DNA of 64,000 nt, taken from positions 124,001 to 188,000 of IMG/VR virus record IMGVR_UViG_3300036770_006893. The stretch is one strand, 5' to 3'. Positions 2,274 through 20,869 of this stretch are shown piece after piece. The notes below the pieces were generated by a model. It did not search any database and had not been told where the DNA came from. It was given only the letters and a program-made list of their open reading frames with translations. How positions within the stretch are numbered: the stretch's first letter is position 1; the number at the start of each line of letters is the position of its first letter. Position numbers and translations under genes: made by a program.

Positions 2274-3018
2274 ATTGTATGTATTTAAAACCTCTATCTG
2301 TTGCTGAGGCCATGGCTTTCAGAATGTCAGGGTTATCGTTTAGCAATAGATACTTATAAGAATTAAAATCTATGAATATACCATCTAAAGTAGTAAGATC
2401 CGCTATAACTGCATTAAATGGATTTTGTTTTACACTTGTCTCAAAATGAAAGAAGTTTATTCTATCATTTAGTTCATTTTCTTTTTCGGGATTTTCTGGT
2501 ATATAAACGGTAAATATTTTGCTATCGACCTTATTTATATTAGTGTCGAGCGAAATAGTTATACATTCTTGTAGCGATTTATCTAATACAAAATTATGTA
2601 ATTTCCATTTGGCCGTATCGTAGATATTTTTTAGTATCTGTTTTGCTATGGAGTCGCTGAGGTCTTTGTTTCTATTAATAAACGATATATATTTTGGCTT
2701 GATGTCCAATTTATTAATTGTTGAGCACACGGCTTCTACATTGGTATCGTTATTTTTCAGATCCACTACTAAATAGTATTTAAGCAGAGAATTATCTCTG
2801 ATTGCCTGTACTATGTCTATCTCATGCAATTCTTTGTTTGAATCATATACACTTTTTGAAAAACAATATTTACACGCATATTCATGAATATAGTTATATC
2901 CGTCTTTATCTTCTATTATTTTTACATCCTTTAATATATTTGGAATATCAAAGTAGCAACCCTTATTATCACCATCCTTAATAAACAAGCAGCCAGAACA
3001 ATATGTATTAATTTTCAT
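2263..3018 (-). CDS. Hypothetical protein (N-terminal CxxC)
   Basis: 251 aa ORF overlapping both neighbours. Confidence 0.6.
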   Translation of the reverse strand: MKINTYCSGCLFIKDGDNKGCYFDIPNILKDVKIIEDKDGYNYIHEYACKYCFSKSVYDSNKELHEIDIVQAIRDNSLLKYYLVVDLKNNDTNVEAVCSTINKLDIKPKYISFINRNKDLSDSIAKQILKNIYDTAKWKLHNFVLDKSLQECITISLDTNINKVDSKIFTVYIPENPEKENELNDRINFFHFETSVKQNPFNAVIADLTTLDGIFIDFNSYKYLLLNDNPDILKAMASATDRGFKYIQYEL

Positions 3019-3443
3019 AGCTTTCTTCCGAAGGTGACAGCTGACAATATTTTATTTTGTTCAATACCGATAATATCGAATTGTTTATTATCCAGAATTT
3101 GTTTTGTAATTTTTTCGTAAGATATATTATTTTTAACACCCTCTATTATTTTTAGAAATTGTTCTTCTGAGATCTGCCTATCTACATACAATTTAGCAAT
3201 GGCATAGACATCGCTAATAACAAAAGTGACTTGTCCGCCATATCTGGTTTTATTTATGATAGTATCGATTGTGGCTGATGTCTTGTCCTGGGCCACAAAC
3301 GCAAGATCTGCACAATAAATAACATCAATCGACGCATTGGGAATAGAGTCTATATTTTTTATATCCCAGTCCACAAAATCTTTGATATTATGTTTTTCTT
3401 TATTTGTATAATCTATAATATTAATTTTCCGTATCATTTGCAA
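3015..3443 (-). CDS. Short SAM-dependent methyltransferase-like protein
   Basis: IPNASIDVIYCADL...KTRYGGQV resembles class I MTase motifs II-III; motif I not evident. Confidence 0.45.
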   Translation of the reverse strand: MQMIRKINIIDYTNKEKHNIKDFVDWDIKNIDSIPNASIDVIYCADLAFVAQDKTSATIDTIINKTRYGGQVTFVISDVYAIAKLYVDRQISEEQFLKIIEGVKNNISYEKITKQILDNKQFDIIGIEQNKILSAVTFGRKL

Positions 3444-3455
3444 CTATCCTTATGT

Positions 3456-4310
3456 CTATATACTGTTTAAATAGTGGTTATATATTTTGGTACAAAATTC
3501 CGACCAGTCGTATTTTTTAATCGTGTCGGAAGCTATGCTTTGCGTCTTTTGGTCTATATCTGATTTTAGTAGATTAGATACTGTGTGTATCATATCCTGT
3601 AGATCTTTTACAACAAAAATATTGGCATCAAAAGCAAATCTTGTGGTTACACAGTAACACCCGCAAGCGGAGGCCGCTAAAAGATTATAATAGGTGTCTG
3701 TATCGATGCAAATGCGATACTTGGATAAAATAGCATAATTCTCATTAATATCATTACTAAATTCATATAGAGTATCGGTTCCTGGTATAGTTTGCTTAAG
3801 GTGCTGATATACGGCCTCTATCTGTTTTTGTTTTTTCGTATTAATAATTAGTATGTTTTTATTTCTTTCTACAGTATCGATATTTTTAGGTGGTATAACG
3901 CCATAGTTTATGTATTCTATATTAGGCATCTCCCACACAGAATCATTCGAAAAAAACGATAATATTTTGTGTGCAGACGTATTGCTAAATAATATTTGCA
4001 TATCTTCTTTTTTCATAGTCTGTGGTGGTGCGTCGTGAATAGATATAATATGCGGAACGAAATATTCCGATAAGCTTTTTTTGTTTTGGGCAAACTCTAA
4101 TGCGCTATTTATCCAAACACAACTATAAAAAATATTATCTATAAATGGCTTATTGGTATTAATGTCTAGTGGTATAAAATACTTTTGCTCATCACTAGAC
4201 ATCGCTACGTCAAACAATGAATTATGCTTAGCATAAAGCATATTAGGAGGTTGGTTTCCTAATATTCTTTTTTTAGTGTAAATTTGATTTTTGATTTGTT
4301 TATTTAGCAT
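3456..4310 (-). CDS. Glycosyltransferase-like (GT-B) protein
   Basis: INYGVIPP, LLAASACGCYCVT, YDWSEFC motifs typical of GT4 C-domain. Confidence 0.55.
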   Translation of the reverse strand: MLNKQIKNQIYTKKRILGNQPPNMLYAKHNSLFDVAMSSDEQKYFIPLDINTNKPFIDNIFYSCVWINSALEFAQNKKSLSEYFVPHIISIHDAPPQTMKKEDMQILFSNTSAHKILSFFSNDSVWEMPNIEYINYGVIPPKNIDTVERNKNILIINTKKQKQIEAVYQHLKQTIPGTDTLYEFSNDINENYAILSKYRICIDTDTYYNLLAASACGCYCVTTRFAFDANIFVVKDLQDMIHTVSNLLKSDIDQKTQSIASDTIKKYDWSEFCTKIYNHYLNSI

Positions 4311-5296
4311 AGGATATCTAATATTCTGCTTTTTTCTTGTGCATCTAAACCATGTTTTTCGACTTTATTGAGATCAGATAGTGCGTCCACTATAGACTGT
4401 GTTAGTACGGATTGCTTATGCTTGTCGATATAGTAGTCTACGGTGTTCATCGATGGAACAGTGATGTGGTCGAGATTGGTGATATCCAGTATTTTACTAT
4501 TGTAGCACTCAGCCATGCTTCTATTTAATCCGCACTCGTATTGATCTTTCAGGTCGATAAAAATATCACAAGAGTTATGTAGTACTTTTAAGTGGTCGTA
4601 GGTAAATTCTTGATTTATAATTTTTATAGGCTTGAGAATAGGATGATAATTCATTTTGTCAAAAATATCTTGTATATTTTTTTCTAATGCTTCTTGGGCA
4701 TTGTATTTTTTAGGGTCCGTTAATGCTAAAACCATACATTTTTCGAGACTATTGCGGCAAGATATGATAAAAGATATAATTATCTTATTGAGAATGTTAT
4801 TGTTTTCTAAATAATTGCCGATAAAGTATAATTTTGTTTTATTATTACAATAATCAAAATTGCCCTGCTGTCCATCAGGAATTTTTTCTATATGGTATAC
4901 TAGCGCTTTGTGTGCTATATTATATTTACTTAGTATATAAGCATTAGTATAATCGTCAACTAAAACAGTATTAAAGTTACGTAATACTTCTAACTGATAT
5001 TGGCTTACGGAATAATCTATCATAGGTATGCATATATTTTTTTCTCCCAAGCTGATATATTTTGGATCACAAATCATTTCGACGGGACAGTGTTGTATCA
5101 CATAGTCGTAGCTATCGAAACTCTGTCTTAGTCTATAGTTTTCGAATTTATCAACATTAACATAGTCTAAATCGGTAATTATTGACTTTGTTTCTAGTTG
5201 AATAGAAGGATTCGATTTTATTGTGTCTATAATATTTCTTGAGGCCATACCTATTAAATCGGTATTATAATATGGTCCAAAATATAATACTTTCAT
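4304..5296 (-). CDS. Glycosyltransferase-like (GT-B) protein
   Basis: MKVLYFGPY N-terminus; LHNSCDIFID...GLNRSMAE. Confidence 0.55.
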   Translation of the reverse strand: MKVLYFGPYYNTDLIGMASRNIIDTIKSNPSIQLETKSIITDLDYVNVDKFENYRLRQSFDSYDYVIQHCPVEMICDPKYISLGEKNICIPMIDYSVSQYQLEVLRNFNTVLVDDYTNAYILSKYNIAHKALVYHIEKIPDGQQGNFDYCNNKTKLYFIGNYLENNNILNKIIISFIISCRNSLEKCMVLALTDPKKYNAQEALEKNIQDIFDKMNYHPILKPIKIINQEFTYDHLKVLHNSCDIFIDLKDQYECGLNRSMAECYNSKILDITNLDHITVPSMNTVDYYIDKHKQSVLTQSIVDALSDLNKVEKHGLDAQEKSRILDILC

Positions 5297-6954
5297 TTTT
5301 GGGTATCTTTCATTTTTGCATAAGCTATGAAGTCTTCGTCAAAACTAATCTTTTTAATTCTTGCTAATTCAGCTTGATTATGATTTCTAATAATTGTTTT
5401 TATCATATCGACGCCCATATCGCTACTAAAGTTTTGGTAAGATGTACCAGATTGACTGAAGCCATAAGCTATGTCTTTACAAAGATTAAGCATCATCATA
5501 GATCCTATTTTTTCGTAATCCATTAGGTTTGATCCACAAATAGACGCTAGATTAAGCATATTCAGCGTATGGTCTTTTGGTACATCGAAATCATTTAGAA
5601 TTTGCGGCTCCTGATCCCAATCGGCCCTATATCCAGAGTCATCTAGTTTATCAAGATAGTTTTCCCATTTTTTGGCTATATGATCCCAATTATAGTGTTT
5701 CTCTACCAAGCTTCTGGTCTCTATACGTTTTTGTAATCTCATAGGCTCTGGTAAATTTATAAACGATAATATGTTTTTAATTAGACTATCGTTATCGGGA
5801 TAAACCCTTATTGCTTTGGTTTCTAATTCCTTGAACCTGTTTTTTATATCTACTTTATATGCGTTGAGTTTATTTATTATATCAACCATAGCGCTATAAT
5901 TCACTGTGGCTACGGGGACACCACAAGCAGCAGCTTCTACTTGAGGCATGCCAAATCCTTCGCATATAGCATATTGTACATAAATATCGAATGTATTATA
6001 TATATTTGCTAATATTTCGTTAGGCACACCTATAGCAACAGACGGTAGTCTGCATGAGTTCTCTAAGCAGTTTTTACAAATTCTAGTAGGATGATTGTAC
6101 GTTGTTGTTTCTACTTGATGGCATCTACCACAAAAATATGTAAACAGCACCTTATTGCATAATTTAGTATCTCTTAGTAATTCTGGTATGTCCCATCCTG
6201 CGTCTGGGTAGCTAGTGTGCAGATACAAATATAAATTTTTAGCGGTTTCTGCATTTTCTTGTGATAGTTTATCTATTAGATTTCTAAACGCAAAAAGCAA
6301 TTCTGGTATGAGTTTTCGTTTTTGATTTCTCATAACAGAACCAATTATTATGGATTCCGGTGGGATACCAAGATTTTTCTTGATTATATTTTTATCTAGA
6401 ACTTTAAATATAGAGAGGTCCACTCCGGGTGATGCGGTATCTATATAGTTTATTTTGCCTCTGCTTTGATTTTTAAGTACATCCGCACCCCAGTCAGAAT
6501 ATGTAAATATCGCATCTGCCCCAATAAATGTATCTATCCATTCGTCTTGCTGAGGAGCAGAATCAACCGTAGGCATTAGTATCCAATGAAAAAATCTTCT
6601 TAATGGAGATAAAGACTGATAATGACTCATCCAATAGTCTCTTACATCTATTACAACATCTGGGCGAAAATCTAATAGAACCTTTTCAAAGCGCCATCTA
6701 CCGAATTGATTATCTTGTCTGGATGAGTACTCATTGAACCTAGGGTCATTTTCTCTAACAGCATTAGCATAGAATCGCCAATTTATATCTTTATCTCTAC
6801 TGTCATTTACGTGAGCGTACGAAGCAAATTCTGCTATGTGAAATTTGTTTGTTTTATACAGTCTCGACAGAATCTCCTTTGCATATGTGCCAAAGCCAGA
6901 GCTTAAAAAGCTTGCTTCAGAACACATTAGTACTTTTAGTTTATTGTTTTTCAT
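5293..6954 (-). CDS. Glycosyltransferase family 4 with internal CxxC...CxxC insertion
   Basis: KLKVLMCSEA..SSGFG; RNQKRK; YNTFDIYVQYAICEGFGMPQVEAAACGVP; YNWDHIAKKW. Confidence 0.85.
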   Translation of the reverse strand: MKNNKLKVLMCSEASFLSSGFGTYAKEILSRLYKTNKFHIAEFASYAHVNDSRDKDINWRFYANAVRENDPRFNEYSSRQDNQFGRWRFEKVLLDFRPDVVIDVRDYWMSHYQSLSPLRRFFHWILMPTVDSAPQQDEWIDTFIGADAIFTYSDWGADVLKNQSRGKINYIDTASPGVDLSIFKVLDKNIIKKNLGIPPESIIIGSVMRNQKRKLIPELLFAFRNLIDKLSQENAETAKNLYLYLHTSYPDAGWDIPELLRDTKLCNKVLFTYFCGRCHQVETTTYNHPTRICKNCLENSCRLPSVAIGVPNEILANIYNTFDIYVQYAICEGFGMPQVEAAACGVPVATVNYSAMVDIINKLNAYKVDIKNRFKELETKAIRVYPDNDSLIKNILSFINLPEPMRLQKRIETRSLVEKHYNWDHIAKKWENYLDKLDDSGYRADWDQEPQILNDFDVPKDHTLNMLNLASICGSNLMDYEKIGSMMMLNLCKDIAYGFSQSGTSYQNFSSDMGVDMIKTIIRNHNQAELARIKKISFDEDFIAYAKMKDTQK

Positions 6955-6981
6955 TTTGAAATAATCTATTTTATGAGAATA

Positions 6982-7009
6982 GAAGTGGGGGCTTTTCAGC
7001 CCCCGCTTC
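6982..7009 (-). terminator. Rho-independent terminator-like hairpin downstream of ssb
   Basis: GAAGCGGGGGC-TGAAAA-GCCCCCACTTC then TATTCT on minus strand; 11-bp stem with one G-U pair. Confidence 0.75.
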
Positions 7010-7037
7010 GTATCTCAATTACGCTACGCGATTAGTC

Positions 7038-7424
7038 TCAAAAGGCCATAGCCTCTGTTTCTTCTGCGCTTTTCGCTGGTGCGCCGCTATTTTTTGAAAG
7101 CTTCGTAATCTTGGAAAAGTTATTTACTCTAACTTTTAAGCTGCTATGCTTAACTCCGTCCTTTTCCCAAGTATCATTCCTTAATGATCCTTCTACCATT
7201 ACTAGATCACCCTTCTTAAATGAAGAGCCTATAATATCCGCACCGCTATCCCATGCTTCACAATTGATAAAAGATGTGATTTTATCCTTTTCACCACTAG
7301 ACTTGGTGTATTCTCGCGATACGGCAACAGTGAAATTAACAACGGATGTTTGTTTTCCTCCGGTATTTACTGTTCTTAATTCAGGATCTCTAGCAAGATT
7401 ACCACGTAATATAGTTATATTCAT
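7038..7424 (-). CDS. ssb: Single-stranded DNA-binding protein
   Basis: MNITILRGNLARDPELR...FINCEAW...KGDLVMVEGSLRNDTWEKDG; SD AAGGAG upstream. Confidence 0.95.
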   Translation of the reverse strand: MNITILRGNLARDPELRTVNTGGKQTSVVNFTVAVSREYTKSSGEKDKITSFINCEAWDSGADIIGSSFKKGDLVMVEGSLRNDTWEKDGVKHSSLKVRVNNFSKITKLSKNSGAPAKSAEETEAMAF

Positions 7425-7469
7425 ATCAAAACTCCTTCAAGGTTAAAATTTGTGCGCCAATCGCACCTT

Positions 7470-7497
7470 ATAATACAATAGGGTCGGTAAAAGTCAA
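7470..7497 (-). promoter_or_regulatory. Sigma70-like promoter for ssb (TTGACT-N16-TATTAT)
   Basis: -35 at 7497-7492, -10 at 7475-7470, 16-bp spacer. Confidence 0.55.
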
Positions 7498-9104
7498 GAC
7501 GCCGGCATAAAACATTTATCTACTATCAGGCCATCACCTGTTTTATTTTTGTTGCCAACAAATATTAAAATATTAGAATTAAAAAGTTGGTGTTTATATT
7601 TTTGATATTGCTCAGGAAATAAGACCACAGAGTCTAATATACCGAACTGGTCCTCTATTGATACAAACGCCATGTCTAATCCCTTGGTTTTTCCTCGTTT
7701 AGTTTTTGTTGTATTGATATTAATTATCTCTCCGGCGATGATAATATTTTTATTTGATATACATGTTTTGAATTGCTTGCAATTACTATTTGTCATACTA
7801 ATATCATAAGTATCTAACTTAGAGCATGTAATAGAGCATCCTAATAGAGTATCCTCAGAATCAGATAGCCATTCTATCTTGTCTATTAGAGAATACGGAG
7901 GATTGAGTAAAGAGTCTATTATTGAGCTTATCGACGTTTTTCTTTTTGTTGTAATTTTACTTTCGGTAATGAGCTTGCGTAGTATAGATATAATATCGGC
8001 ATTCTGATTATTTTGGGATATATCTATGCATTTTTCTATTTCTTTTGTTGTTAATTGACTTATATTCTCAAAATCGAATAGCATCTCAGTTCTATTCTTT
8101 TTGATAAAATCTATAGCTCCACTAGAAATAATAGCTTTTGCCGCTGTTGAATTTATATTCACTAATATTTTTAGTAATAGAGATGGCCAAGAAACAGAAT
8201 AAAGGTCTATGTTAGACGTTAATAGTTCAAGCTTATCAAAAATAGATTGACCGACACCCTTTATGTCCGTAAGACCAAAAATTATATCGTCGTTGTGTAT
8301 CTCAAAAAACCGATTCATTAGTCTAAGGTCTGGTATTTTAACAGAAATATCCATTTCGGATGCATTTTTAACTAATTCTTTTATTTCTTGCTTGGGGTCT
8401 ATTTTATCTTTCGCGTATTTCAAGTATGATGCAAAAAAGACCTTTGGAAAGTGAGCTTTTGCATATGCTGACAAATATCCGTTCATCGCATACGATATAG
8501 AGTGAGATTTATTGAAAGAGTATCTTTGGCTTTTCTCGATCCAGCTAAAAATTTCTTCAGCCTCATCCTGAGAGACTATATTTAATGCAGAACAACCTTC
8601 TAAGAATCTGGTTTTAATTTTTGACATTTCTTCTGGCTTTTTCTTGCCGATAGCCTTTCTTAACATATCAGCTTCTTTTAAGTCGAAACCTGCTATATCT
8701 CTTGTTATTTGCATAGCCTGTTCTTGATAAATCATCTCGCCGTAGGTATTTAATAGAGCCGGGCCGAGGGCTGGATGAAATATATCTACGCTCTCCAATC
8801 CATTTTTCTTATCTATATAATGGTCGGTAACGCTTTTTCCGTCTCTTACAGCTTCTAAGCAACCGGGCCTAATAATAGCAATAAGCGCAGAAAGTTGCTC
8901 AATATTTTGAGGCTTTAATTTTTTTGCTGTCATTTGACCTAGTCTAGACTCTAGCTGAAAACACCCCTTGGTATTTCCGGCAGATATTAAATCCCATGTT
9001 TTTTCACAGCTTAAGTTCAGCTTAGTTAAATCAGCAGAAAAAACTACCGAGCCGTCTATATAATCAAAACTACAGCCACAATCAAATTTTATTTGTTTAC
9101 TCAT
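7494..9104 (-). CDS. dnaE: DNA polymerase III alpha, C-terminal half (fingers, HhH, OB fold)
   Basis: GCFQLES, IAIIRPG, MIYQEQ, ADMLRKAIGKK, YSFNKSH, GLTDIKGVG, MAFVSIEDQFG; lacks PHP and catalytic aspartates. Confidence 0.92.
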   Translation of the reverse strand: MSKQIKFDCGCSFDYIDGSVVFSADLTKLNLSCEKTWDLISAGNTKGCFQLESRLGQMTAKKLKPQNIEQLSALIAIIRPGCLEAVRDGKSVTDHYIDKKNGLESVDIFHPALGPALLNTYGEMIYQEQAMQITRDIAGFDLKEADMLRKAIGKKKPEEMSKIKTRFLEGCSALNIVSQDEAEEIFSWIEKSQRYSFNKSHSISYAMNGYLSAYAKAHFPKVFFASYLKYAKDKIDPKQEIKELVKNASEMDISVKIPDLRLMNRFFEIHNDDIIFGLTDIKGVGQSIFDKLELLTSNIDLYSVSWPSLLLKILVNINSTAAKAIISSGAIDFIKKNRTEMLFDFENISQLTTKEIEKCIDISQNNQNADIISILRKLITESKITTKRKTSISSIIDSLLNPPYSLIDKIEWLSDSEDTLLGCSITCSKLDTYDISMTNSNCKQFKTCISNKNIIIAGEIININTTKTKRGKTKGLDMAFVSIEDQFGILDSVVLFPEQYQKYKHQLFNSNILIFVGNKNKTGDGLIVDKCFMPAS

Positions 9105-9110
9105 GTGTTA

Positions 9111-9800
9111 TTAAACAAACGATCCCCTAAATTTTACTTTATTCGCAATTTTTCTATGTAGCTTTAGAAATCGAATTATTATGTCAGCAGTATCTCTTAC
9201 GTCTTTAATAGCATCGTGCGACCCTTCTGCAGATATGCCTAAGTATTCTCGCAGGGTGTCCATCGTATAATTCTTGAGTTCGTTGCTACCCTCAAACCAA
9301 TAAAATACCAAGTTCATTAAATCCAAAACATCTCTTGGATAAAAAAGAGAAGACTTTTCCTCTTTATTGAGATTGCCGTATTTAGTGCTTAGTCTTTCTA
9401 TAATTTTCAGATCGAACCTATTTATATTATACCCAGCAGCAATCGGAGCGCTAAAGCACGATTTTTTTTCTGATCTGGTATGATACATTTCTAGATATGA
9501 CACAAACGCTTTCCATCCTTGAGATTGTGGAGGATAAGCTAGCCATTCTGATAATATCTTAGACTTATCGACGCCCTTTACTTTAGCGTGAAAATCTAAG
9601 ACGTCGCTATCTTTATAGGCATATTCACTATCAGCCTCTAATAGATCTGGCTTAAAATAAACATTAAATTCTGAATCTTTTATTATTTCCAATTTGATTG
9701 GGTCTATAATTACTGCCGCTAGTTGCACAGGACTACAGACACTAGGATTGGATCCGTCTGTTTCAAAATCAAATACACAAATTTTTTGTAAATTAGCCAT
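9111..9800 (-). CDS. DEDDh 3'-5' exonuclease (Pol III epsilon-like)
   Basis: ExoI VFDFETDG, ExoII GYNINRFDL, ExoIII HDAIKD. Confidence 0.9.
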   Translation of the reverse strand: MANLQKICVFDFETDGSNPSVCSPVQLAAVIIDPIKLEIIKDSEFNVYFKPDLLEADSEYAYKDSDVLDFHAKVKGVDKSKILSEWLAYPPQSQGWKAFVSYLEMYHTRSEKKSCFSAPIAAGYNINRFDLKIIERLSTKYGNLNKEEKSSLFYPRDVLDLMNLVFYWFEGSNELKNYTMDTLREYLGISAEGSHDAIKDVRDTADIIIRFLKLHRKIANKVKFRGSFV

Positions 9801-9972
9801 TTAGAGTTACCGATGTAGATGGGTGAATATAAATCCTATTATTTGGGTCGGCTACAGCTTGACAGTTTATTGTTTTGCAGCAGCTTACTCTGACCTCTTG
9901 TGTTTTAATATATTCGGTTCCATTGATCGTAAATCTTTGTCCTACAGTAAGTTCTGAAAATGTTTTATTCAT
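9793..9972 (-). CDS. 59-aa microprotein between dnaE-N and exonuclease
   Basis: MNKTFSELTVGQRFTINGTEYIKTQEVRVSCCKTINCQAVADPNNRIYIHPSTSVTLNG; 8-bp overlaps with both neighbours; below ORF-track cutoff. Confidence 0.75.
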   Translation of the reverse strand: MNKTFSELTVGQRFTINGTEYIKTQEVRVSCCKTINCQAVADPNNRIYIHPSTSVTLNG

Positions 9973-11836
9973 AGTTAATGCCTTTATTAAGAGTGTCGGA
10001 TACCATCATTATTTTGTCTAACATAGCTATTCCCAATACATCAAATTTAATTATACCCAATGATTCTAAATCCTGCATTTCCATACCGGCTATCATTTGC
10101 TTATTTTTGGAGTCATAAACCATTGGGCAAATTTCTGATAAGTTTTGTGTACCAATAACAACCCCAGCGGCATGTTTGGATTGATTTATTTTAGTTCCCT
10201 CCAAACGAATGGCTTGTTCGAATCTTTTAGCCAGTGGGCCAGCTACGGAATTATCATCCATAAGATAACACCATTCTTTGAGTTTGTCAACATTGTTTTC
10301 TAAGGCCCAGCGAATAATAGAAGATTCGCCGGTTTCTTCTTTCATCTCTTGTAGCTCGTCAGCAATTTTAGCCTCATCTGGTATATTTTTGGTTATTTTA
10401 TTCATTTCTTCAAAGCTAATATTACCATAGGCTCTGAGTACGTCTTTCAAAGCACCTCTACCCTTAATGGTGTTAAAGGTTATCATTTGAGATACCTTGT
10501 CATGACCATATTTATTTTTGATATATTCTATGATTTGCTCTCTTTTATATTTGGGCACATCAACGTCTATATCTGGCATGCTTATACGATCACCCGAATT
10601 TCTACCAGCATTATAAAATCGTTCAAAGATTAAGTCATATTTTATTGGATCAATAGATGTAATTCCTATCAGATAGGATACCAAGCACCCGGCAGCAGAA
10701 CCTCTTCCTGGTCCAGGTAACCAGCCATTGTCCCTTACCTGATCAACGATATCGGACACTATTAAAAAATAGCTAGACAAGCCAGACCCCTGTAAAACCT
10801 CAAGCTCATACTTAATTCTGTTTACGTATTTTTCTTGATCATGTTTGGGTATGCTATTGGCTATTTTTTGAGACCAGCCTTTTCTACATAGTTCTCTTAA
10901 GTATTCGTCGCTATTCATATTATTAGGACAGCTAAATGGCGGTAGCATAGGGCGGCTAGTTATGTCATAGTCTTCACACATTTCTTCTACCATAAAAGTA
11001 TTTTCTATTTCTTGACCAGTATGCAAAGACGACATCTCTTCTCCAGAGATTATATAATAATTATCTGATTTAAAAAAACATCCCATTGGTATGTCTTCAT
11101 TATCTAGTATTTTTGTATTTATATCTACTAATGTGGTTTTCAGATTATTACAAAGTAATATTCTTTGATCTGCACTGTCTTCTTTATTGGCATAATGAGC
11201 ATCTGGTGTGCATATAACTTTAGTATTTGTTATTCTGCCGATTGATCTAATATTTTCTGTTAATTGTATTTGGTCTGGCAAAAACTCTTGATCCATAAGC
11301 TGAGCTTCTAAGAAAATATTGTCAGCTCCAAAAATGTCTTTTAGAAGATAAACATAGTCTATACACTGTGTCTGATCATAATTACAGGCCCGTAGTAAAT
11401 TAGCCAATGTTGACCCCATGTGTCCACAAAAACCTATCATATTATGATTGGCATATTCTTTTATATCCTGGATGCTTACTCTGGGTTTATGATAAAAATT
11501 TTCCGGAGTATTACTTAGCGACACAAGCTTTATTAGGCTTTTCCATCCCTCTAAGTTTTTGGCCAATACAATAAAATGAGATAGCTTGCTGTTCTCTTTA
11601 GTTTTTATAGATGCGTCTTTATCAGAAATATATAATTCACAACCCAATATTGGCTTTATATTATATTTTTTCATTGTGTTATAGAATTGTACCGCACCGG
11701 CTATTGTTCCGTGGTCAGTAATAGCGCACGCTTTAGACCCTATATTTAGACATCTATCGGCTATTTGGTCTGGTTTGGATAAGCCATCTAATAGGCTATA
11801 GTGAGTATGGACGTGAAGAGGTATATAGTTTTTCAT
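9965..11836 (-). CDS. dnaE: DNA polymerase III alpha, N-terminal half (PHP + palm/thumb, all catalytic Asp)
   Basis: HVHTHYSLLDG, AITDHG, PGRGSAAGCLV, MPDIDVD, SKHAAGVVI, IKFDVLG then ends after about 20 aa. Confidence 0.95.
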   Translation of the reverse strand: MKNYIPLHVHTHYSLLDGLSKPDQIADRCLNIGSKACAITDHGTIAGAVQFYNTMKKYNIKPILGCELYISDKDASIKTKENSKLSHFIVLAKNLEGWKSLIKLVSLSNTPENFYHKPRVSIQDIKEYANHNMIGFCGHMGSTLANLLRACNYDQTQCIDYVYLLKDIFGADNIFLEAQLMDQEFLPDQIQLTENIRSIGRITNTKVICTPDAHYANKEDSADQRILLCNNLKTTLVDINTKILDNEDIPMGCFFKSDNYYIISGEEMSSLHTGQEIENTFMVEEMCEDYDITSRPMLPPFSCPNNMNSDEYLRELCRKGWSQKIANSIPKHDQEKYVNRIKYELEVLQGSGLSSYFLIVSDIVDQVRDNGWLPGPGRGSAAGCLVSYLIGITSIDPIKYDLIFERFYNAGRNSGDRISMPDIDVDVPKYKREQIIEYIKNKYGHDKVSQMITFNTIKGRGALKDVLRAYGNISFEEMNKITKNIPDEAKIADELQEMKEETGESSIIRWALENNVDKLKEWCYLMDDNSVAGPLAKRFEQAIRLEGTKINQSKHAAGVVIGTQNLSEICPMVYDSKNKQMIAGMEMQDLESLGIIKFDVLGIAMLDKIMMVSDTLNKGINYE

Positions 11837-12870
11837 ATAGTTCCTGGTGCCTTATAATGACCAATCGTGTGATTGGGACTTATATATGTTTTAGTTGTGT
11901 GGTCGATACCATTTAATTCGATTTCGTGTTTGATTTGTTCACATTTTGTCATGTATGTGCCTTTGGCGCATGTCTGATTGTCTCTGTATTCTAGTATAGC
12001 CGGTATGTTTGAGTTTTCAAATGTGGTTTTTCCAAAGTGACACAGCTTGGTACACATCCAAGACTTATTTAGTTTGGGTCTTTTTGAAGATTTTATTGCT
12101 TCAAATTTTTGCCTTAACATATGTTCGGTTTCTATTAGGTCGTTTTTATCAAAACATATCGAAAATGGTCCTCCGTCGTTAATAAAGTATATAGAAAAAA
12201 TGATATTCTCTATATCCGGATATAGGTGACTTATGGCATAGTGATAAATCCTAAGCTGAGGATCTTTTTCTAATTTTTCTTGAGTCTTTTCTTGGCCTGT
12301 TGCCCAATCAAGCCTACGTCCAGTTTTCCAGTCTATTACCTCTATGGTGTTCTTATTGACCAGTGTTATTAGATCTATCGTGCCTTTTAGGGCTAGATTG
12401 CCCTCTATTACCCCCTCAGGAGTTTGGAAAGAATATTTTGACCATTGTTTTTTTATTTCGAAATCGAAATGCTTTTCTGGACACAATATATTTCTATTTC
12501 TTGGATCAAACATACCATCATTAAAAGAAATTGCTTTATTTACCCAGTTACGACAATCAGTTAAGTCTTTTTGAGTCCACTTGTGGTGGTTTGCTTGTGT
12601 AGAATAAAAATCATATACCTGATCTATAATTTTATCTAAGTCATAACTGTTTATGTTGATCTTCCCAACTATGTCATCATCTATAATATCTATATCGTCC
12701 TGATTAGCCTGTTTAATAAAGGCTAGTATTTCTAATACCTTATGAACTATTGTTCCTTTGTCTGCCTTTTGTCCAGATGGTCCTCGCCACCCTAGAACAT
12801 ATTCAATAAAATATTGTTGCTCACACATGGAATGCGTGTTAAATGAGCTACTTCTAAAGTATGTGATTAT
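11833..12870 (-). CDS. PD-(D/E)xK nuclease (RecB/Cas4-like exonuclease); probable non-ATG start upstream of track start 12828
   Basis: LKGTIDL, VIDWKTG, QLRIY, C-x3-C-HF; in-frame upstream IITYFRSSSFNTHS-MC matches the family N-terminal motif. Confidence 0.8.
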   Translation of the reverse strand: MITYFRSSSFNTHSMCEQQYFIEYVLGWRGPSGQKADKGTIVHKVLEILAFIKQANQDDIDIIDDDIVGKININSYDLDKIIDQVYDFYSTQANHHKWTQKDLTDCRNWVNKAISFNDGMFDPRNRNILCPEKHFDFEIKKQWSKYSFQTPEGVIEGNLALKGTIDLITLVNKNTIEVIDWKTGRRLDWATGQEKTQEKLEKDPQLRIYHYAISHLYPDIENIIFSIYFINDGGPFSICFDKNDLIETEHMLRQKFEAIKSSKRPKLNKSWMCTKLCHFGKTTFENSNIPAILEYRDNQTCAKGTYMTKCEQIKHEIELNGIDHTTKTYISPNHTIGHYKAPGTI

Positions 12871-13514
12871 AATGGTAGGATCCTTTTACTTTTTAGAAAA
12901 TTATATATGATTGAGTTTTGTTGATCTATATTTAGGTCATTATTATCTATAATTAGATCGAAGTTATTATGTGAGTAATTTTGTGGGTCCAAAGCAACTT
13001 CGCTTTCATGCTCAGAGTTGTAAGGATTTCTCGTTAGCTTAATAACATACCCACCAGCCGATTTGATGGATTCGACCTCGTTTGGAAATCTACAATCAGC
13101 TATAACAGCTATATCAGGATCATCTTTTTTTATCTTATTGATAGTTGCTTGGCACCATACATCTTTTTTCATTTTACGGAAAATTTCTGTTCCGACAAAT
13201 TGCATAACTTGTCTAGCTGTCATAAATCCCGTTTCATCATAGTCCTTAATCAATGTCCAGGAAGCATTATATCCTGGCATGTTCTTCCATTCTAAACAAG
13301 TTAGGGTGTTCTTTTCTTCGTCTGTGCCATAACACTGTTTGTCTGTTAAGCCTAGTATATCAATACAAATATCTTGTTTTAATGTATCAGCAAAGCTGTA
13401 TACCCTACATTCTGTTGTATACTGAAAATCCCTAAAAACTAAAGACTCTATGAAACGAGCACACGAAGTTTTTCCAGATTGTTTCCTTCCGGCAAATGCT
13501 ATAATCTTAGTCAT
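12867..13514 (-). CDS. Deoxynucleoside monophosphate kinase (T4 gp1-like)
   Basis: IIAFAGRKQSGKT P-loop, SFADTLK, RQVMQFVGTE, IADCRFPNE. Confidence 0.9.
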   Translation of the reverse strand: MTKIIAFAGRKQSGKTSCARFIESLVFRDFQYTTECRVYSFADTLKQDICIDILGLTDKQCYGTDEEKNTLTCLEWKNMPGYNASWTLIKDYDETGFMTARQVMQFVGTEIFRKMKKDVWCQATINKIKKDDPDIAVIADCRFPNEVESIKSAGGYVIKLTRNPYNSEHESEVALDPQNYSHNNFDLIIDNNDLNIDQQNSIIYNFLKSKRILPL

Positions 13515-14671
13515 AAAAATATTTCTATTTGTGGTAATATTACCTTTTTAACTTCTTCGACATTCATACCGCCAACATCTGGCGCATCAATTTTGATTGT
13601 TTTAATATTGTATGTTTTTTGGCACTTTTTAATTATTTTTTCAGCCCCCTCTGTCCCAGCCTTATCATTATCCATTAACAGTAATATGGTCATAGCTCCG
13701 GATATATCCAAGAGCAGCTTCTGCCTGTCTGCTAAATTAGATCCAAATATCGCAACAGAATTATGTATACCAGATTCCTCTAATCTCCAAACATTGCCTG
13801 GACTTTCTACGAGTATGACGCTTTTGGTTTTTTGTATGTGTTCTTTTGCGAACCAAAAATTATACAGATTTTCTTGTGTTTTAAAATTATGGCTGTGTCT
13901 CCACTTGGAATACTTCCATATATCACTATCGTTTGGACATGATAAGTTTGGATCATGATAAGAGTTACATTTGTTGCATTTTTCGAATATGCTTCTTCCT
14001 GTACATCCCACCATAAATTGATAATTTTTATCATAAACTGGCACTACTGAACGACCAAACATTTCTTTGCCACTATTCAAACATTCTCCAACATCGTATT
14101 TTATTAAGATCTTATCGCTAAATCCTCTATCATAAAAATATTGGGACGGTATCGACAGATTTCTGACTATGGTTTGTCTACCAATTTTCTGATTATTTTC
14201 TTCTTCATGACTTTTTATATGTTTGATGGTATTTACAAATTTATTTTTTTCTATAGTCTTTTTATTAATTTTGATATCGCTAAGGTTTTGTTTCAAAAAA
14301 TTTTGAACAAATTCTATAGCTTCTTGAAATGAACAACACTCGTCTCCATCTTTATTCCAGCCGTGATTTTGATGCGACAGTACGCCTCTCACAAAGCCTA
14401 TAATAGATGATTTAAAATATTCCTCACAATGATGTGTTCTGCATTTCCAGTTACCCCTATAAGACTCTCCAGTAGGATAAAGATTTAGAGCAGATATATT
14501 ATCTCCTCCGTGTATAGGACACGGCATTGATAGCATTTTTCCGTTTTGTCTATATTCTATCTGCAGATACTCTAGTAGATCATCTATTTCTTCGCAAAGA
14601 CTATCAGATAGAATTTTTAATTTATACTGATTGTATTTATGCGAATGGTATTTCTTCTTCATTGTTTGCAT
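13511..14671 (-). CDS. dnaG: DNA primase (DnaG-like)
   Basis: CHC2 finger CPIHGGDN...WKCRTHHC; TOPRIM VILVESPGNV and MDNDKAG. Confidence 0.85.
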   Translation of the reverse strand: MQTMKKKYHSHKYNQYKLKILSDSLCEEIDDLLEYLQIEYRQNGKMLSMPCPIHGGDNISALNLYPTGESYRGNWKCRTHHCEEYFKSSIIGFVRGVLSHQNHGWNKDGDECCSFQEAIEFVQNFLKQNLSDIKINKKTIEKNKFVNTIKHIKSHEEENNQKIGRQTIVRNLSIPSQYFYDRGFSDKILIKYDVGECLNSGKEMFGRSVVPVYDKNYQFMVGCTGRSIFEKCNKCNSYHDPNLSCPNDSDIWKYSKWRHSHNFKTQENLYNFWFAKEHIQKTKSVILVESPGNVWRLEESGIHNSVAIFGSNLADRQKLLLDISGAMTILLLMDNDKAGTEGAEKIIKKCQKTYNIKTIKIDAPDVGGMNVEEVKKVILPQIEIFL

Positions 14672-16097
14672 CGACTATGAATCCATCTTTTTTGGAGCCA
14701 GTATTATTGGTAATCTCTAATTTTGTTGAACCTTCAGAAATCTTAGCGCACCAACCTTTCATTTGGCAATTAATGTAATCGTTATCGTCTAATCCGCCTC
14801 CATGACGACTGATAATGGGTATTAGCTTACGATTACCTGATTGTCCACCATCTTCAGCTATTTCTTCATCGCTTTTTCTTTTGAATATTGTAAAATTACT
14901 ACACAGCCATATAATTCTGTCTGAACCACTGGCCGTGTCTGTGCTTTCTTTTGTGATTCCGTCTCTATTAAGCTGAACAAATGCCACGATTGGTATTTGA
15001 TATTTTGTAGCAAAATTATGTAAAGAAGTCATCATAAAGCCCAGTACCTGATACTCTTTAAGGTCTTGTGATAGTCCTGATGTATCCATAAGCTTTAGAT
15101 AATCGTAAAATATAACGCACTCTTTAGCTGTTCCGTCATCATTAAGTCCCACCGTTTGAACAACCCATCTTTTCATGATAGATAGCTGTTCGTCGAATGG
15201 TTTACCAGCTATGCTTTTGTAAAATAGTGGTGTTTTTTTAAGATTTTCTTTTGACTCATTAACTTTCTGCAAACTAACAGGAGACTCGGAAAACTTGCCG
15301 GTTTCTATTTTAGATATTTCTATCTCAGTACTCATAGCGATCAATCTGTTTACATGATCTTCGGTTGTCATTTCAGTATCCATGTTTAAAACAGGTATAT
15401 TTAACTTATTAGCTATAAAAAATCCCATATTATCAGCTAATAATGTTTTACCTGTTTTTGGACGCGCAGCTATAACATTAACAGTGCTTTTTCTTAAGCC
15501 TCCTCCAATAGCCTGATCGTATATAGGAAATCCCGTTGATATGCCAACCTGAGCTATTGGGTTGTCTATTAGATGCTGCAAATAGTCATCTATACCATCG
15601 CCAACATGTTTTGGATTAGTATCTTCAGATCCAGATATCTTAGAAGAAAAATCAAAAATAGTATCTTCGGCTATACCAAGAATAGATCCTATAGTCTCTG
15701 ATCCATTGATATCTAAAAGTTTATCTTGTGCCACAGACAGCTCGGCGTGTAGCGATCTAGCTATCTCTAATTTTTTTATTTTTGCCGCAAAGGGTTTGAT
15801 ATTCTCCAAACTGGCCGGAAAATCTAATATAGCCTTTAGGTGTTGTGTCTCCTCTTTGTTTTGCATCAAGGGCAATACGCCAAGCTCTTGGGCTGAGGAG
15901 TAAATACTGGCTACGTCTATATGAATCGGTTGCTCTTTAGTGAATATGTTCTTTAGGCACTTCCATATAAATTGATTACTATCAATAGTGAAAGTAGAAT
16001 CAGAGATAATATCGGCCACCTCGATATAGGCCTTATCTCCATATTTACATATACAGCTTAAAACAGCTCTTTCGGCTGATGGGTCGCAAAGTATCAT
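14637..16097 (-). CDS. dnaB: Replicative DNA helicase (DnaB family)
   Basis: AERAVLS N-terminus; Walker A AARPKTGKT; IFYDYLKL; QLNR. Confidence 0.93.
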   Translation of the reverse strand: MILCDPSAERAVLSCICKYGDKAYIEVADIISDSTFTIDSNQFIWKCLKNIFTKEQPIHIDVASIYSSAQELGVLPLMQNKEETQHLKAILDFPASLENIKPFAAKIKKLEIARSLHAELSVAQDKLLDINGSETIGSILGIAEDTIFDFSSKISGSEDTNPKHVGDGIDDYLQHLIDNPIAQVGISTGFPIYDQAIGGGLRKSTVNVIAARPKTGKTLLADNMGFFIANKLNIPVLNMDTEMTTEDHVNRLIAMSTEIEISKIETGKFSESPVSLQKVNESKENLKKTPLFYKSIAGKPFDEQLSIMKRWVVQTVGLNDDGTAKECVIFYDYLKLMDTSGLSQDLKEYQVLGFMMTSLHNFATKYQIPIVAFVQLNRDGITKESTDTASGSDRIIWLCSNFTIFKRKSDEEIAEDGGQSGNRKLIPIISRHGGGLDDNDYINCQMKGWCAKISEGSTKLEITNNTGSKKDGFIVDANNEEEIPFA

Positions 16098-20281: not shown

Positions 20282-20869
20282 TTAAAGATGCTCGTATGAT
20301 TGCGGTAAATACGCCGCCCATTCGTCGGGAATACTCTTTATAGTAGTTAGAGACTCTACAAATGGCAAGAAGCGAAAACTAGATTTTGGTCTTACAGGAA
20401 TCTTTAATAATTTCATACCAGCCTGTGTTGGTGTGCGATTACCCTTTTTTCTATTACATTCGACACAGCATGTAACAATATTTGTCCAATTTGTTGGACT
20501 AGTATTTGAAGACCATTTAGACTTTGGTATAACGTGGTCATAAGTTAATTGATTTATGTTAAATGTATTATTACAGTATTGACACGTATAAGCATCCCTA
20601 ATTAGTATATTTTTTCTATTAAAATTTACTGTTCTATTATTTAGGCTTAAAAATCTATGTATTCTTGCCACAGCTGGTACAGGAAATCTCCTACTAATAC
20701 CTTGTATAAAGTCATTTTTGTAGAAATCTATGATTTCTATGGAGTATTGACTATTAGTATTTTCTGATTTGAGGCCCCATATTATGGCCCTGTGCCAGTG
20801 AACAATGCCTATTGGAGTATAATCAGCGTTCAAGATTAAGCATCTATTGTGGTCTGCTTTCGTTTCCAT
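20282..20869 (-). CDS. HNH endonuclease (McrA-like)
   Basis: RDAYTCQYC, TYDHVIPKS, NWTNIVTCCVECNRKKGN. Confidence 0.9.
   Translation of the reverse strand: METKADHNRCLILNADYTPIGIVHWHRAIIWGLKSENTNSQYSIEIIDFYKNDFIQGISRRFPVPAVARIHRFLSLNNRTVNFNRKNILIRDAYTCQYCNNTFNINQLTYDHVIPKSKWSSNTSPTNWTNIVTCCVECNRKKGNRTPTQAGMKLLKIPVRPKSSFRFLPFVESLTTIKSIPDEWAAYLPQSYEHL

What the first reader, a model, noticed from the sequence alone, without database searches (positions are those of the whole stretch)
7494..11836. Intein-less split DNA polymerase III alpha with an exonuclease gene between the halves
Seen: dnaE-N (PHP, PDIDVD, KFDVLG) stops about 20 aa after the third catalytic Asp. dnaE-C starts with a new MSKQIKFDCGC leader and resumes at the GCFQLES region. 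Neither end carries intein residues, and the FNKSH site where cyanobacterial DnaE is intein-split is intact. A 59-aa ORF and a DEDDh exonuclease lie between, all co-oriented. Inference: a heterodimeric replicase assembled non-covalently at the palm/fingers boundary, co-expressed with its proofreader as a 3-4 subunit complex.
Basis: partly seen in the sequence, partly recalled or inferred. Interest (0 to 1): 0.8.

Follow-up and report, generated by a model that had tools for sequence, protein, structure and literature searches.

The report
Two-gene phage DNA polymerase III alpha
An uncultured jumbo phage encodes its DnaE-type replicative polymerase as two separate conserved genes with a proofreading-type exonuclease gene between them and no intein or intron to rejoin them, and the same layout recurs in thousands of environmental phage sequences.

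Summary
On the minus strand lie dnaE-N (9965-11836: PHP, palm, thumb, all three catalytic Asp), a 59-aa ORF (9793-9972), a DEDDh exonuclease (9111-9800) and dnaE-C (7494-9104: fingers, HhH, OB). Start and stop codons overlap or nearly abut. The halves meet end to end on full-length DnaE profiles, at about E. coli alpha 579/585.

The split is not an artefact. Three independent metagenome runs hold both junctions unchanged. All 59 related IMG/VR loci keep the break, and 145 of the 150 best 50%-identity clusters are C-half-only proteins.

No intein residues sit at the break, although canonical and split inteins occur at other sites in relatives. Relatives carry unrelated genes (methylase, MazG, UDG, glycosyltransferase) between the halves, which argues against splicing.

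Split C-halves carry a roughly 24-residue head with three invariant cysteines. The five relatives continuous across this junction lack it, and they sit nested inside the split clade.

A cultured phage, Rossellomorea phiT1, is split independently at the same loop.

Best explanation: a non-covalently assembled two-piece Pol III alpha, co-translated with its exonuclease. Assembly is inferred, not shown. This is a new variant of the phage "genes in pieces" kind.

The parts
9965..11836 (-). dnaE-N: PHP, palm and thumb, plus the first helix of the fingers domain of a DnaE-type Pol III alpha (623 aa). Catalytic Asp residues lie in PDIDVD (421-426) and KFD (597-599).
   Evidence: Pfam PHP and DNA_pol3_alpha. 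PHROG 405 profile positions 41-616. phmmer to E. coli alpha residues 6-574 and to the Taq and Mtb enzymes. Motif positions.
9965..10039 (-). N-half tail (residues 600-623 plus stop). The conserved part, L-D-K-[IV]-M ... L..G, is followed by a short variable end. No Cys, Ser or Thr intein start is present.
   Evidence: Alignment of 27 tails. The stop codon is covered without differences in three runs.
9793..9972 (-). orf59: a conserved 59-aa small beta-barrel protein with an invariant Cys-Cys pair. Its start overlaps the dnaE-N stop and its stop overlaps the exo start. Function unknown.
   Evidence: 24-sequence alignment A1 with invariant F14, C31, C32 and V55. AF2 pLDDT 93.8. Only generic KOW/SH3-like or uncharacterised phage protein matches. 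An orf59-like domain sits at the N-terminus of the 222-aa ORF in L046.
9111..9800 (-). DEDDh (DnaQ-like) 3'-5' exonuclease, 229 aa, the likely proofreader. It has a conserved C-terminal K-F-[KR]-G-S-F peptide.
   Evidence: Pfam RNase_T. PHROG 192 'DNA polymerase exonuclease subunit', E 3e-21. Weak PDB matches to DnaQ-like domains, including a PolC-type exonuclease. Motifs conserved in 25 relatives.
7494..9104 (-). dnaE-C: fingers, HhH/beta-binding region and OB fold of Pol III alpha (536 aa). FNKSH is intact at residues 197-201. No tau-binding C-terminal domain is present.
   Evidence: Pfam. PHROG 405 profile positions 623-1054. phmmer to E. coli alpha residues 585-897. AF2 pLDDT 94.8. Foldseek best hits are Pol III alpha of Taq, Mtb and E. 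coli, E down to 3e-23.
9006..9104 (-). Head of dnaE-C (residues 1-33). About 24 extra residues form three short beta strands. C9, C11 (the 'CGC' motif) and C33 are invariant. The head is absent from relatives that are continuous across this junction.
   Evidence: Head alignment. A2 of 76 sequences at 35-76% identity: C9, C11 and C33 are among only 18 invariant columns. 120 of 145 split representatives have CxC in the first 40 residues. The junctions read (P0175, P0249) lack the head. The AF2 head has pLDDT about 89-93.
7038..7424 (-). SSB, the last gene of the conserved block.
   Evidence: Pfam SSB, E 8e-26. Synteny in the related loci.
6987..7004 (-). G+C-rich hairpin followed by a T-rich tail, lying after SSB. 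No terminator-like site was found on this strand inside 7494-11836; the only other minus-strand site in the scanned 6900-14800 is at 13071-13049.
   Evidence: Scan.
11833..12828 (-). PD-(D/E)XK nuclease gene directly upstream. Its stop overlaps the dnaE-N start by 4 nt.
   Evidence: Pfam PDDEXK_1. Conserved position in the related loci.

Best explanation
The phage's C-family replicative polymerase is encoded by two independent genes. They are translated as two polypeptides that reassemble non-covalently into one Pol III alpha-like enzyme.

dnaE-N supplies the PHP domain, the palm with all three catalytic aspartates, the thumb, and the first helix of the fingers. dnaE-C supplies the rest of the fingers (dNTP binding), the HhH/beta-binding region and the OB fold. 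Neither half could polymerise alone.

Assembly probably uses the pre-existing palm-fingers interface. The N-half tail helix would dock into the C-half fingers. The split-specific, Cys-rich beta head of the C-half would stabilise the new N-terminus, possibly through a metal site.

The DEDDh exonuclease between the halves is most likely the epsilon-like proofreader. The four ORFs have overlapping or abutting start and stop codons and no terminator between them, so they are probably made from one mRNA in the order N, orf59, exo, C. That order would favour co-translational assembly.

Shown: gene structure, conservation, absence of intein features, and independence of the two genes. Inferred: association of the halves, proofreading, co-translation, and the role of the cysteines. 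Unknown: the role of orf59.
For: 1. The halves are exactly complementary. On PHROG 405 the N half covers profile positions 41-616 and the C half 623-1054. On E. coli alpha they cover 6-574 and 585-897.

2. The sequence is real. Contigs of three runs cover both junctions with 0 differences and no indels or joints.

3. It is conserved. All 59 IMG/VR loci (46-100% identical in dnaE-N) keep the break, and those with enough flank keep the order PDDEXK, dnaE-N, (orf59), exo, dnaE-C, SSB. The halves stay open and 45-75% identical. More than 3,500 90%-identity clusters are of C-half length. Of the 150 best 50%-identity representatives, 145 are C-half-only.

4. The genes are independent. Relatives carry other genes between the halves:
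- a C5-methylase and MazG (L053), and DUF1501 plus DUF1559 (L039);
- UDG, a 715-aa glycosyltransferase, and DHFR.

5. Inteins are recognisable in this family but sit elsewhere. They lie at RPG|C and LRK|S, and as split inteins with a free-standing ORF at FNK|SH and at N residue 379/380.

6. There is a split-specific adaptation. C9, C11 and C33 are invariant in 76 split C-halves, and the head they lie in is missing from both junctions read in junction-continuous relatives.

7. The C-half folds confidently as the C-terminal half of Pol III alpha.

8. The same loop is split independently in the cultured Rossellomorea phage phiT1 (gp20, a 49-aa ORF, gp18). It groups with unsplit Bacillus phage DnaEs outside the environmental clade.

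9. There is precedent. The split gp43A/gp43B PolB of Aeromonas phage 25 co-purifies and is active, and the split NrdA of phage Aeh1 is active (PMC2988022).
Against: There is no protein-level or RNA-level evidence here.
- No multimer prediction was possible, and no RNA run was listed.
- The Rfam negatives are weak, because Rfam also found nothing in Bacillus phage Jayan, where a break at the catalytic PDIDTD looks like an intron.
- About 25 of 145 split representatives lack the Cys head, so it is not indispensable. Some of these are truncated gene calls.
- The exonuclease matches solved DnaQ-like structures only weakly.
- Its role as this polymerase's proofreader rests on family and position. 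The PHP domain also appears, by my own reading of the sequence, to keep a full set of candidate metal ligands and could proofread by itself.
Confidence: 0.8

Rival explanations
1. The orf59-exo stretch is an intron, and RNA splicing joins the two dnaE exons into one mRNA.
For: Intron-interrupted phage dnaE genes exist. ORF240 of Bacillus phage 0305phi8-36 is annotated as interrupted by a mobile intron, and Bacillus phage Jayan is probably another case. Rfam negatives are weak. No RNA data could be obtained.
Against: - The 860-nt gap is filled end to end by two conserved protein genes with overlapping start and stop codons, leaving no room for a structured intron core.
- The N-tail is conserved as protein up to a few variable last residues before its stop, and the C-head is conserved as protein from its ATG.
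- Gap length and content vary from 0.83 to 4.1 kb, with unrelated cargo genes.
- There was no Rfam intron match in the window or in 11 loci.
Confidence: 0.03
2. The halves are ligated after translation by a cryptic, very short split intein or another trans-splicing element at the tail and head.
For: Cys residues lie close to the C-half N-terminus (the CGC motif). Split inteins are common in this gene family and in cyanobacterial DnaE (PMC2677866).
Against: - The tail beyond the homologous helix (about 10 aa) and the 8 residues before the CGC motif together give fewer than 25 residues. The N-intein parts alone in the fractured genes of PMC2677866 are 88-105 residues.
- There is no Cys or Ser at a putative N-intein start.
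- The residue before the first Cys varies (D, P, S, A, E, N, T) instead of being a conserved Asn.
- Canonical intein ends (C...HN|C or S) are easily seen at other sites in relatives.
- The head is predicted as an ordered part of the C-half.
Confidence: 0.03
3. The split is an assembly or sequencing error, or a pseudogene in decay.
For: None was found. The only contig break in the Logan assemblies lies at 9773-9795, inside the exo gene, not at a dnaE junction.
Against: - Identical junctions occur in three runs.
- Two IMG/VR contigs from different samples are 100% identical.
- The break is kept in 59 loci and in thousands of protein clusters.
- In the relatives with readable flanks both halves are open and conserved at levels similar to the neighbouring replication genes.
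Confidence: 0.01
4. The two products do not form one enzyme. For example, dnaE-C or dnaE-N works with host proteins or has a separate role, and the phage relies on another polymerase.
For: No physical evidence of association exists. Only 64 kb of a 224-kb genome was read, so another polymerase elsewhere cannot be excluded.
Against: - Both halves are always present together and adjacent.
- Catalytic and substrate-binding motifs are kept in both: PDIDVD and KFD in the N half, and invariant Q127, E128, R149, K155, Y195 and H201 in the C half.
- Relatives continuous across the junction occupy the same syntenic slot.
Confidence: 0.08

Closest known systems
Split PolB (gp43A/gp43B) of Aeromonas phages 25 and 44RR, and the other phage 'genes in pieces' (NrdA of Aeh1, T4 topoisomerase gp39/gp60)
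   Same: A contiguous replication enzyme of relatives is encoded as two adjacent ORFs with no intein. The pieces must reassemble. For gp43A/B and NrdA, co-purification and activity were shown (PMC2988022).
   Different: - The polymerase family differs (B versus C).
- Those splits are associated with a homing endonuclease gene or an untranslated spacer and are confined to a few phages.
- Here the gap holds a conserved DEDDh exonuclease and a small beta-barrel protein.
- Here the split dominates a very large clade and comes with a conserved Cys3 head.
Rossellomorea phage phiT1 (PV767480.1) gp20, gp19, gp18
   Same: It is a cultured phage whose DnaE is annotated as two 'DNA polymerase III subunit alpha' CDSs. 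The break is in the same loop: the N tail ends about 20 aa after KFDLLG, and the C half starts at the IPLDD position. A small ORF lies between the halves.
   Different: - There is no exonuclease between the halves and no Cys head, and the gap is only 150 nt.
- It is only about 32% identical to the window's halves.
- It branches with unsplit Bacillus phage DnaEs, so this is an independent fission.
- A very small intron was not excluded.
- I found no paper discussing it.
Cyanobacterial split-intein DnaE and the 'fractured' DnaE genes of Dassa et al. 2009
   Same: DnaE is encoded in pieces. In fractured genes the pieces are adjacent, with a free-standing gene between them (PMC2677866). Relatives of the window (L011, L048, L056, L057) have exactly such split-intein fractures at other sites.
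   Different: Those pieces carry intein halves and are ligated by trans-splicing. The cyanobacterial site lies next to FNKSH. The window's break has no intein residues and its FNKSH is intact.
Intron-interrupted phage dnaE (Bacillus phage 0305phi8-36 ORF240)
   Same: A phage DnaE is interrupted by DNA that carries an ORF.
   Different: There the interruption is a mobile intron with an intron-encoded protein and is removed from the RNA. Here the intervening DNA consists of conserved cellular-type genes with no room for an intron core.
E. coli Pol III core (alpha-epsilon-theta) and PolC
   Same: A C-family polymerase works with a DEDDh proofreader. A small third protein is encoded next to the exonuclease, as theta accompanies epsilon in the core (general knowledge).
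   Different: In E. coli, alpha is one chain, epsilon is encoded elsewhere, and theta is helical. In PolC the exonuclease is inserted in the PHP domain of a single chain. Here the exonuclease is a separate gene placed at the palm/fingers break of a two-chain alpha.

Membership tests
C-family DNA polymerase, DnaE type (Pol III alpha) | N-terminal PHP domain | tested here: met
   Pfam PF02811, E 1.8e-37, residues 7-179 of dnaE-N.
C-family DNA polymerase, DnaE type (Pol III alpha) | Palm with three catalytic aspartates (E. coli D401, D403, D555) | tested here: met
   PF07733 matched over its full length. PDIDVD at 421-426 and KFD at 597-599 align with the Taq and E. coli alpha motifs.
C-family DNA polymerase, DnaE type (Pol III alpha) | Fingers, HhH/beta-binding and OB domains | tested here: met
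   PF17657 and PF14579 in dnaE-C. The AF2 model matches Pol III alpha structures, E down to 3e-23.
C-family DNA polymerase, DnaE type (Pol III alpha) | All domains on one polypeptide | tested here: not met
   A stop codon at 9965-9967 is followed by two intervening genes and a new ATG at 9104.
C-family DNA polymerase, DnaE type (Pol III alpha) | DNA polymerase activity | not testable with these tools
   Needs expression of both halves and primer extension.
Split-intein DnaE / fractured genes | Intein halves at the broken ends (N-intein starting with Cys or Ser; C-intein ending in His-Asn followed by Cys, Ser or Thr) | tested here: not met
   The tail and head are too short, and the residue before the first Cys is not a conserved Asn. 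Canonical intein ends are seen at other sites in relatives.
Split-intein DnaE / fractured genes | Break at the cyanobacterial site next to FNKSH | tested here: not met
   FNKSH is intact at C-half residues 197-201.
Intron-interrupted gene | Structured non-coding intron RNA between the exons | tested here: not met
   No Rfam match, which is weak evidence on its own. The gap is fully occupied by conserved ORFs and varies in gene content among relatives.
Intron-interrupted gene | Spliced mRNA | not testable with these tools
   No RNA run was listed.
Phage 'genes in pieces' (split enzyme without intein) | The gene is contiguous in relatives and two conserved ORFs are present here | tested here: met
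   Unsplit relatives P0175 and P0249 occupy the same synteny. Both halves are conserved.
Phage 'genes in pieces' (split enzyme without intein) | Homing endonuclease gene or untranslated spacer at the break | tested here: not met
   The gap holds orf59 and a DEDDh exonuclease, and no HNH, GIY-YIG or LAGLIDADG match was found.
Phage 'genes in pieces' (split enzyme without intein) | The pieces reassemble into an active enzyme | not testable with these tools
   Needs co-purification and an activity assay.
DnaQ-like DEDDh 3'-5' exonuclease | Exo I (DxE), Exo II (D) and Exo III (H-x4-D) motifs | tested here: met
   DFETDG, NINRFD and SHDAIKD are conserved in 25 relatives. Pfam RNase_T. PHROG 192.
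DnaQ-like DEDDh 3'-5' exonuclease | Binds and proofreads for the polymerase | not testable with these tools
   Inferred only from family and from its persistent position between the halves.

The most novel reading that the evidence does not exclude
The fission was a single ancient event. It was made stable by a new assembly element: the roughly 24-residue beta head of dnaE-C, whose three invariant cysteines, possibly with a fourth ligand from another subunit, form a metal-dependent staple holding the two polymerase chains together. The exonuclease gene was captured in the gap so that the N half, the proofreader and the C half assemble co-translationally. On this view the two lineages continuous across the junction inside the clade are secondary re-fusions that discarded the head. 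This would give a natural, evolution-tested split site and docking module for Pol III alpha.
Probability: 0.3. Interest if true: 0.7.

Novelty: new variant of a known kind. Interest (0 to 1): 0.55.

Why it matters
C-family replicases are normally single chains of more than 1,000 residues. The only well-known natural split, in cyanobacteria, is repaired by a split intein.

Here a very large and diverse group of environmental, mostly jumbo, phages runs on a two-chain alpha with no repair mechanism. The same loop was split again independently in a cultured phage. This has several consequences.
- It marks E. coli alpha residues about 575-585 as a naturally permissive split site. That is useful for structure-function work and for engineering split Pol III alpha.
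- It offers a candidate docking module, the Cys3 head, that can be tested by mutagenesis.
- It gives a family in which intein-mediated and intein-free breaks coexist in one gene. Some relatives encode DnaE in three pieces. This suits study of how "genes in pieces" arise, persist and revert.
- It is a warning for annotation pipelines and polymerase-based phage phylogenies, which would score these genes as fragments.

Tried and rejected
- Near-identical DNA in GenBank phages: none found.
- Protein searches of GenBank phages: only distant DnaEs at 23-37% identity. DnaB gave no closer cultured relative.
- Rfam on the window and on 11 loci: nothing. I treat this as weak, because Rfam also found nothing at the likely intron of phage Jayan.
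- RNA runs: none listed, so splicing could not be tested directly.
- Multimer prediction: not available, and read-through or concatenated proteins are not accepted. Model coordinates are not exposed, so Cys-Cys distances in the C-half model could not be measured.
- orf59: no Pfam or PHROG family. The atlas, PDB and BFVD searches gave only a generic KOW/SH3-like barrel and uncharacterised phage proteins. I therefore do not call it a polymerase subunit.
- Host inference: close relatives sit in MAGs labelled Alphaproteobacteria, Flavobacteriales and Chitinophagia. The labels are discordant, so these are probably mis-binned phage contigs.
- An alignment-based genome scan failed for lack of a conserved stretch.
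- Literature: PMC8008677, PMC7412058, PMC4889955 and PMC12926913 contain nothing on an intein-less split DnaE. Searches for 'split DnaE' return split-intein papers.
- A clamp-binding motif at EMLFDF (C residues 340-345) was rejected. It aligns with the R-x-x-[ML]-L helix of E. coli and Taq alpha, not with QADMF.

Full report
**What is there**

The window is about 33% G+C, almost every gene is on the minus strand, and no tRNA was found. It is part of a 224-kb IMG/VR viral contig (L001).

The finding sits in a replication module. In order, this module holds:
- a DnaB-like helicase, a Toprim primase and a dNMP kinase;
- a PD-(D/E)XK nuclease, dnaE-N, orf59, exo, dnaE-C and SSB;
- further upstream on the minus strand (at higher window coordinates), RecA, PhoH and ribonucleotide reductase.

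dnaE-N (9965-11836, 623 aa) has the PHP domain and the complete Pol III alpha catalytic domain. dnaE-C (7494-9104, 536 aa) has the fingers, HhH and OB domains. Between them lie a 59-aa ORF and a 229-aa RNase_T-family protein with DEDDh motifs.

The stop of dnaE-N overlaps the start of orf59. The stop of orf59 overlaps the start of exo. Only 6 nt separate the exo stop from the dnaE-C ATG. The only convincing terminator-like hairpin on this strand lies after SSB.

**The halves are complementary**

Against the 1,190-position phage DnaE profile PHROG 405, the N half covers positions 41-616 and the C half 623-1054.

Against solved structures, N residues 4-618 align with E. coli alpha 6-574, and C residues 25-340 align with E. 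coli alpha 585-897. The third catalytic Asp is D599 (E. coli D555), 24 residues before the end of the N half.

By the E. coli domain limits as I recall them (palm to 560, fingers from 561), the break falls about 20 residues into the fingers domain, after its first helix. The first roughly 24 residues of dnaE-C have no counterpart in E. coli or Taq alpha.

**Not an artefact and not decay**

Logan contigs from three subsurface-metagenome runs cover the dnaE-N stop/orf59 start and the exo stop/dnaE-C start with no differences, indels or joints. A fourth run holds fragments, one of which spans the dnaE-N stop.

In IMG/VR, 59 loci encode a dnaE-N relative at 46-100% identity. In every one the N ORF stops at the same place. 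Every locus with enough flank has a separate dnaE-C.

The protein databases give the scale:
- More than 3,500 90%-identity clusters of C-half length match, on contigs up to about 240 kb.
- Of the 150 best 50%-identity representatives, 145 are C-half-only proteins that start at the same position.
- Of those 145, 91 are plain and 54 carry in-frame intein-sized insertions.
- The remaining 5 carry N-half sequence continuous across this junction.

**No intein and no sign of an intron at the break**

The N tails end a few variable residues after a conserved L-D-K-[IV]-M ... L..G helix. The C heads start with M plus about 5 variable residues and then F-x-[FY]-x-C-G-C-x-F.

Too few residues are available for an intein. 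The residue before the first Cys is not a conserved Asn. Inteins are nonetheless easy to recognise in this very family, at other sites:
- L017 has a canonical intein with an HNH domain at RPG|C.
- L053 has one at LRK|S.
- L011 and L048 (in dnaE-C, at FNK|SH) and L056 and L057 (in dnaE-N, at residue 379/380) have the 'fractured gene' layout of Dassa et al.: an N-intein, a free-standing ORF, then a C-intein.

Those four phages therefore encode DnaE in three pieces. One junction is intein-mediated and the other is intein-free.

The gap cannot be a conventional intron for three reasons.
- It is filled by conserved protein genes.
- Its length ranges from 0.83 to 4.1 kb.
- In relatives it holds unrelated cargo: a C5-methylase and MazG; DUF1501 and DUF1559; UDG; a 715-aa glycosyltransferase; DHFR.

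Rfam finds nothing. That test alone is weak, and no RNA run could be found.

**A split-specific feature**

In an alignment of 76 C halves at 35-76% identity, only 18 columns are invariant. Three of them are C9, C11 and C33.

Of 145 split representatives, 120 have the CxC motif in the first 40 residues. Several of the rest are truncated gene calls.

Two relatives that are continuous across the junction were examined in context. P0175 is a 1,133-aa protein in the same syntenic slot, with its exonuclease gene further downstream. P0249 is a 1,102-aa protein with the exonuclease gene just upstream. Both have a short plain linker and none of these cysteines.

AlphaFold2 models the C half with pLDDT 94.8. 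The head forms three short strands with pLDDT about 89-93. The model's best PDB matches are the C-terminal halves of Taq, M. tuberculosis and E. coli Pol III alpha. I could not measure Cys-Cys distances, so metal binding remains a hypothesis.

**The intervening genes**

The exonuclease keeps its Exo I, II and III motifs and a conserved C-terminal K-F-[KR]-G-S-F peptide in 25 relatives. It matches PHROG 192, 'DNA polymerase exonuclease subunit'.

Across the wider clade it stays between the halves, most often directly upstream of dnaE-C, and in L076 directly after dnaE-N. In the two junction-continuous relatives examined in context (P0175, P0249) it lies elsewhere.

orf59 is a real gene. It is conserved with an invariant F, a CC pair and a V, and its model has pLDDT 93.8. 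It is only a generic small beta-barrel resembling many uncharacterised phage proteins.

It is confined to relatives of at least about 57% identity in dnaE-N, where L046 has an extended 222-aa version. Its role is open.

**Evolution**

In trees of the C-half region, the environmental sequences form one clade with 100% support. This clade is separate from the cultured-phage DnaEs: Nanodon, Anath, PK-1 and a gut phage, all unsplit, and phiT1.

Inside the clade the split state is found on all deep branches. The five junction-continuous sequences form two nested groups. An AU test rejects a tree in which all split sequences form one clade (p 0.00035). The group was defined after seeing a first tree.

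The shared Cys head makes one ancient fission followed by two re-fusions the most economical reading, but this is not proven.

Rossellomorea phage phiT1 is split at the same loop: gp20, then a 49-aa ORF, then gp18. It has no head and no exonuclease between the halves, and it branches with unsplit Bacillus phages. The loop has therefore been broken at least twice independently, which suggests a structurally permissive site.

**Comparison with what is known**

Intein-free split enzymes are established in T4-related phages. gp43A/gp43B of Aeromonas phage 25 co-purify and polymerise. The split NrdA of Aeh1 is active. T4 topoisomerase is another case (PMC2988022).

DnaE in pieces is known with split inteins in cyanobacteria and in the fractured genes of PMC2677866. 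It is also known with introns, as in 0305phi8-36. PHROG fragment families show that cultured-phage DnaE genes are often broken at other sites.

I found no paper describing an intein-free, two-gene DnaE. The search covers only the held library. Such genes are already in public records, annotated simply as 'DNA polymerase III subunit alpha'.

I therefore rate this as a new variant of a known kind. It is a C-family counterpart of the gp43A/B case. Three things distinguish it: its very wide distribution, the embedded proofreader gene, and the conserved Cys3 head.

**Verdict**

Physical assembly, the role of the 59-aa protein and the role of the cysteines remain to be tested.

Noticed in passing
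L011:8678-11691 and L048:8727-11674 (dnaE-C); L056:6034-9094 and L057 (dnaE-N): In these relatives the dnaE halves are further 'fractured' by a split intein with a free-standing ORF of about 285-305 aa between the intein halves. The sites are FNK|SH in the C half and residue 379/380 in the N half. DnaE is therefore encoded in three pieces, with one intein-mediated and one intein-free junction.
   Followed up: partly
L017:8726-11092; L053:10176-12866; representatives P0122-P0263: Contiguous inteins (one with an HNH domain) sit in dnaE-C at RPG|C and LRK|S. Of 145 representative C halves, 54 carry intein-sized in-frame inserts at four recurrent sites, around residues 77-85, 126-128, 147-154 and 199/200. 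Some carry two.
   Followed up: partly
L068 (Rossellomorea phage phiT1, PV767480.1) 1622-4904: This cultured phage has DnaE annotated as two CDSs (gp20 of 573 aa, gp18 of 469 aa) broken at the same loop as the window, with a 49-aa ORF (gp19) in a 150-nt gap. It could serve as an experimentally tractable model.
   Followed up: partly
L039:8722-11077: Genes for DUF1501 and DUF1559 with an N-terminal methylation motif lie between exo and dnaE-C. These families are, from memory, typical of Planctomycetota-like bacteria. This could be a host hint, a captured gene pair or a chimeric contig.
   Followed up: no
L053:7908-9145; L074:3372-3911; L075:314-835: The inter-half gap acts as a cargo site in distant relatives. 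It holds a C5 cytosine methylase with MazG, a uracil-DNA glycosylase, or DHFR.
   Followed up: partly
window 9111-9140 (exo C-terminus) and 25 relatives: The exonuclease ends in a conserved K-F-[KR]-G-S-F peptide after the Exo III motif. It may be a docking motif for the polymerase or a clamp.
   Followed up: no
L037:4055-5989: The PD-(D/E)XK nuclease gene upstream of dnaE-N is interrupted by about 950 nt at residue 168/169 in this relative. This looks like another mobile insertion.
   Followed up: no
L077-L080 (genome contigs): Close relatives (59-63% identity) of the phage dnaE-C lie on contigs binned into MAGs labelled Alphaproteobacteria, Flavobacteriales, Chitinophagia and 'bacterium'. 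The discordant labels suggest phage contigs mis-binned into bacterial MAGs.
   Followed up: no
window 9766-9802: All three Logan assemblies break their contigs here, inside the exo 5' end. Short 32-37-nt unitigs reach much higher depth (up to 321x against about 85x). This suggests co-occurring related phages share this conserved stretch.
   Followed up: no
window 4304-6954, 54946-56019, 58741-59598, 60985-63889; 56142-57242; 20282-20869: The window carries several glycosyltransferase genes, an IMPDH/GMP-reductase family gene, and an HNH endonuclease gene next to PhoH.
   Followed up: no
L071 (Bacillus phage Jayan) 2483-5890: This DnaE is annotated as two 'DNA polymerase' CDSs broken exactly at the catalytic PDIDTD motif, with a gap of about 270 nt. 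It looks like a small unannotated intron, and Rfam did not detect it.
   Followed up: partly
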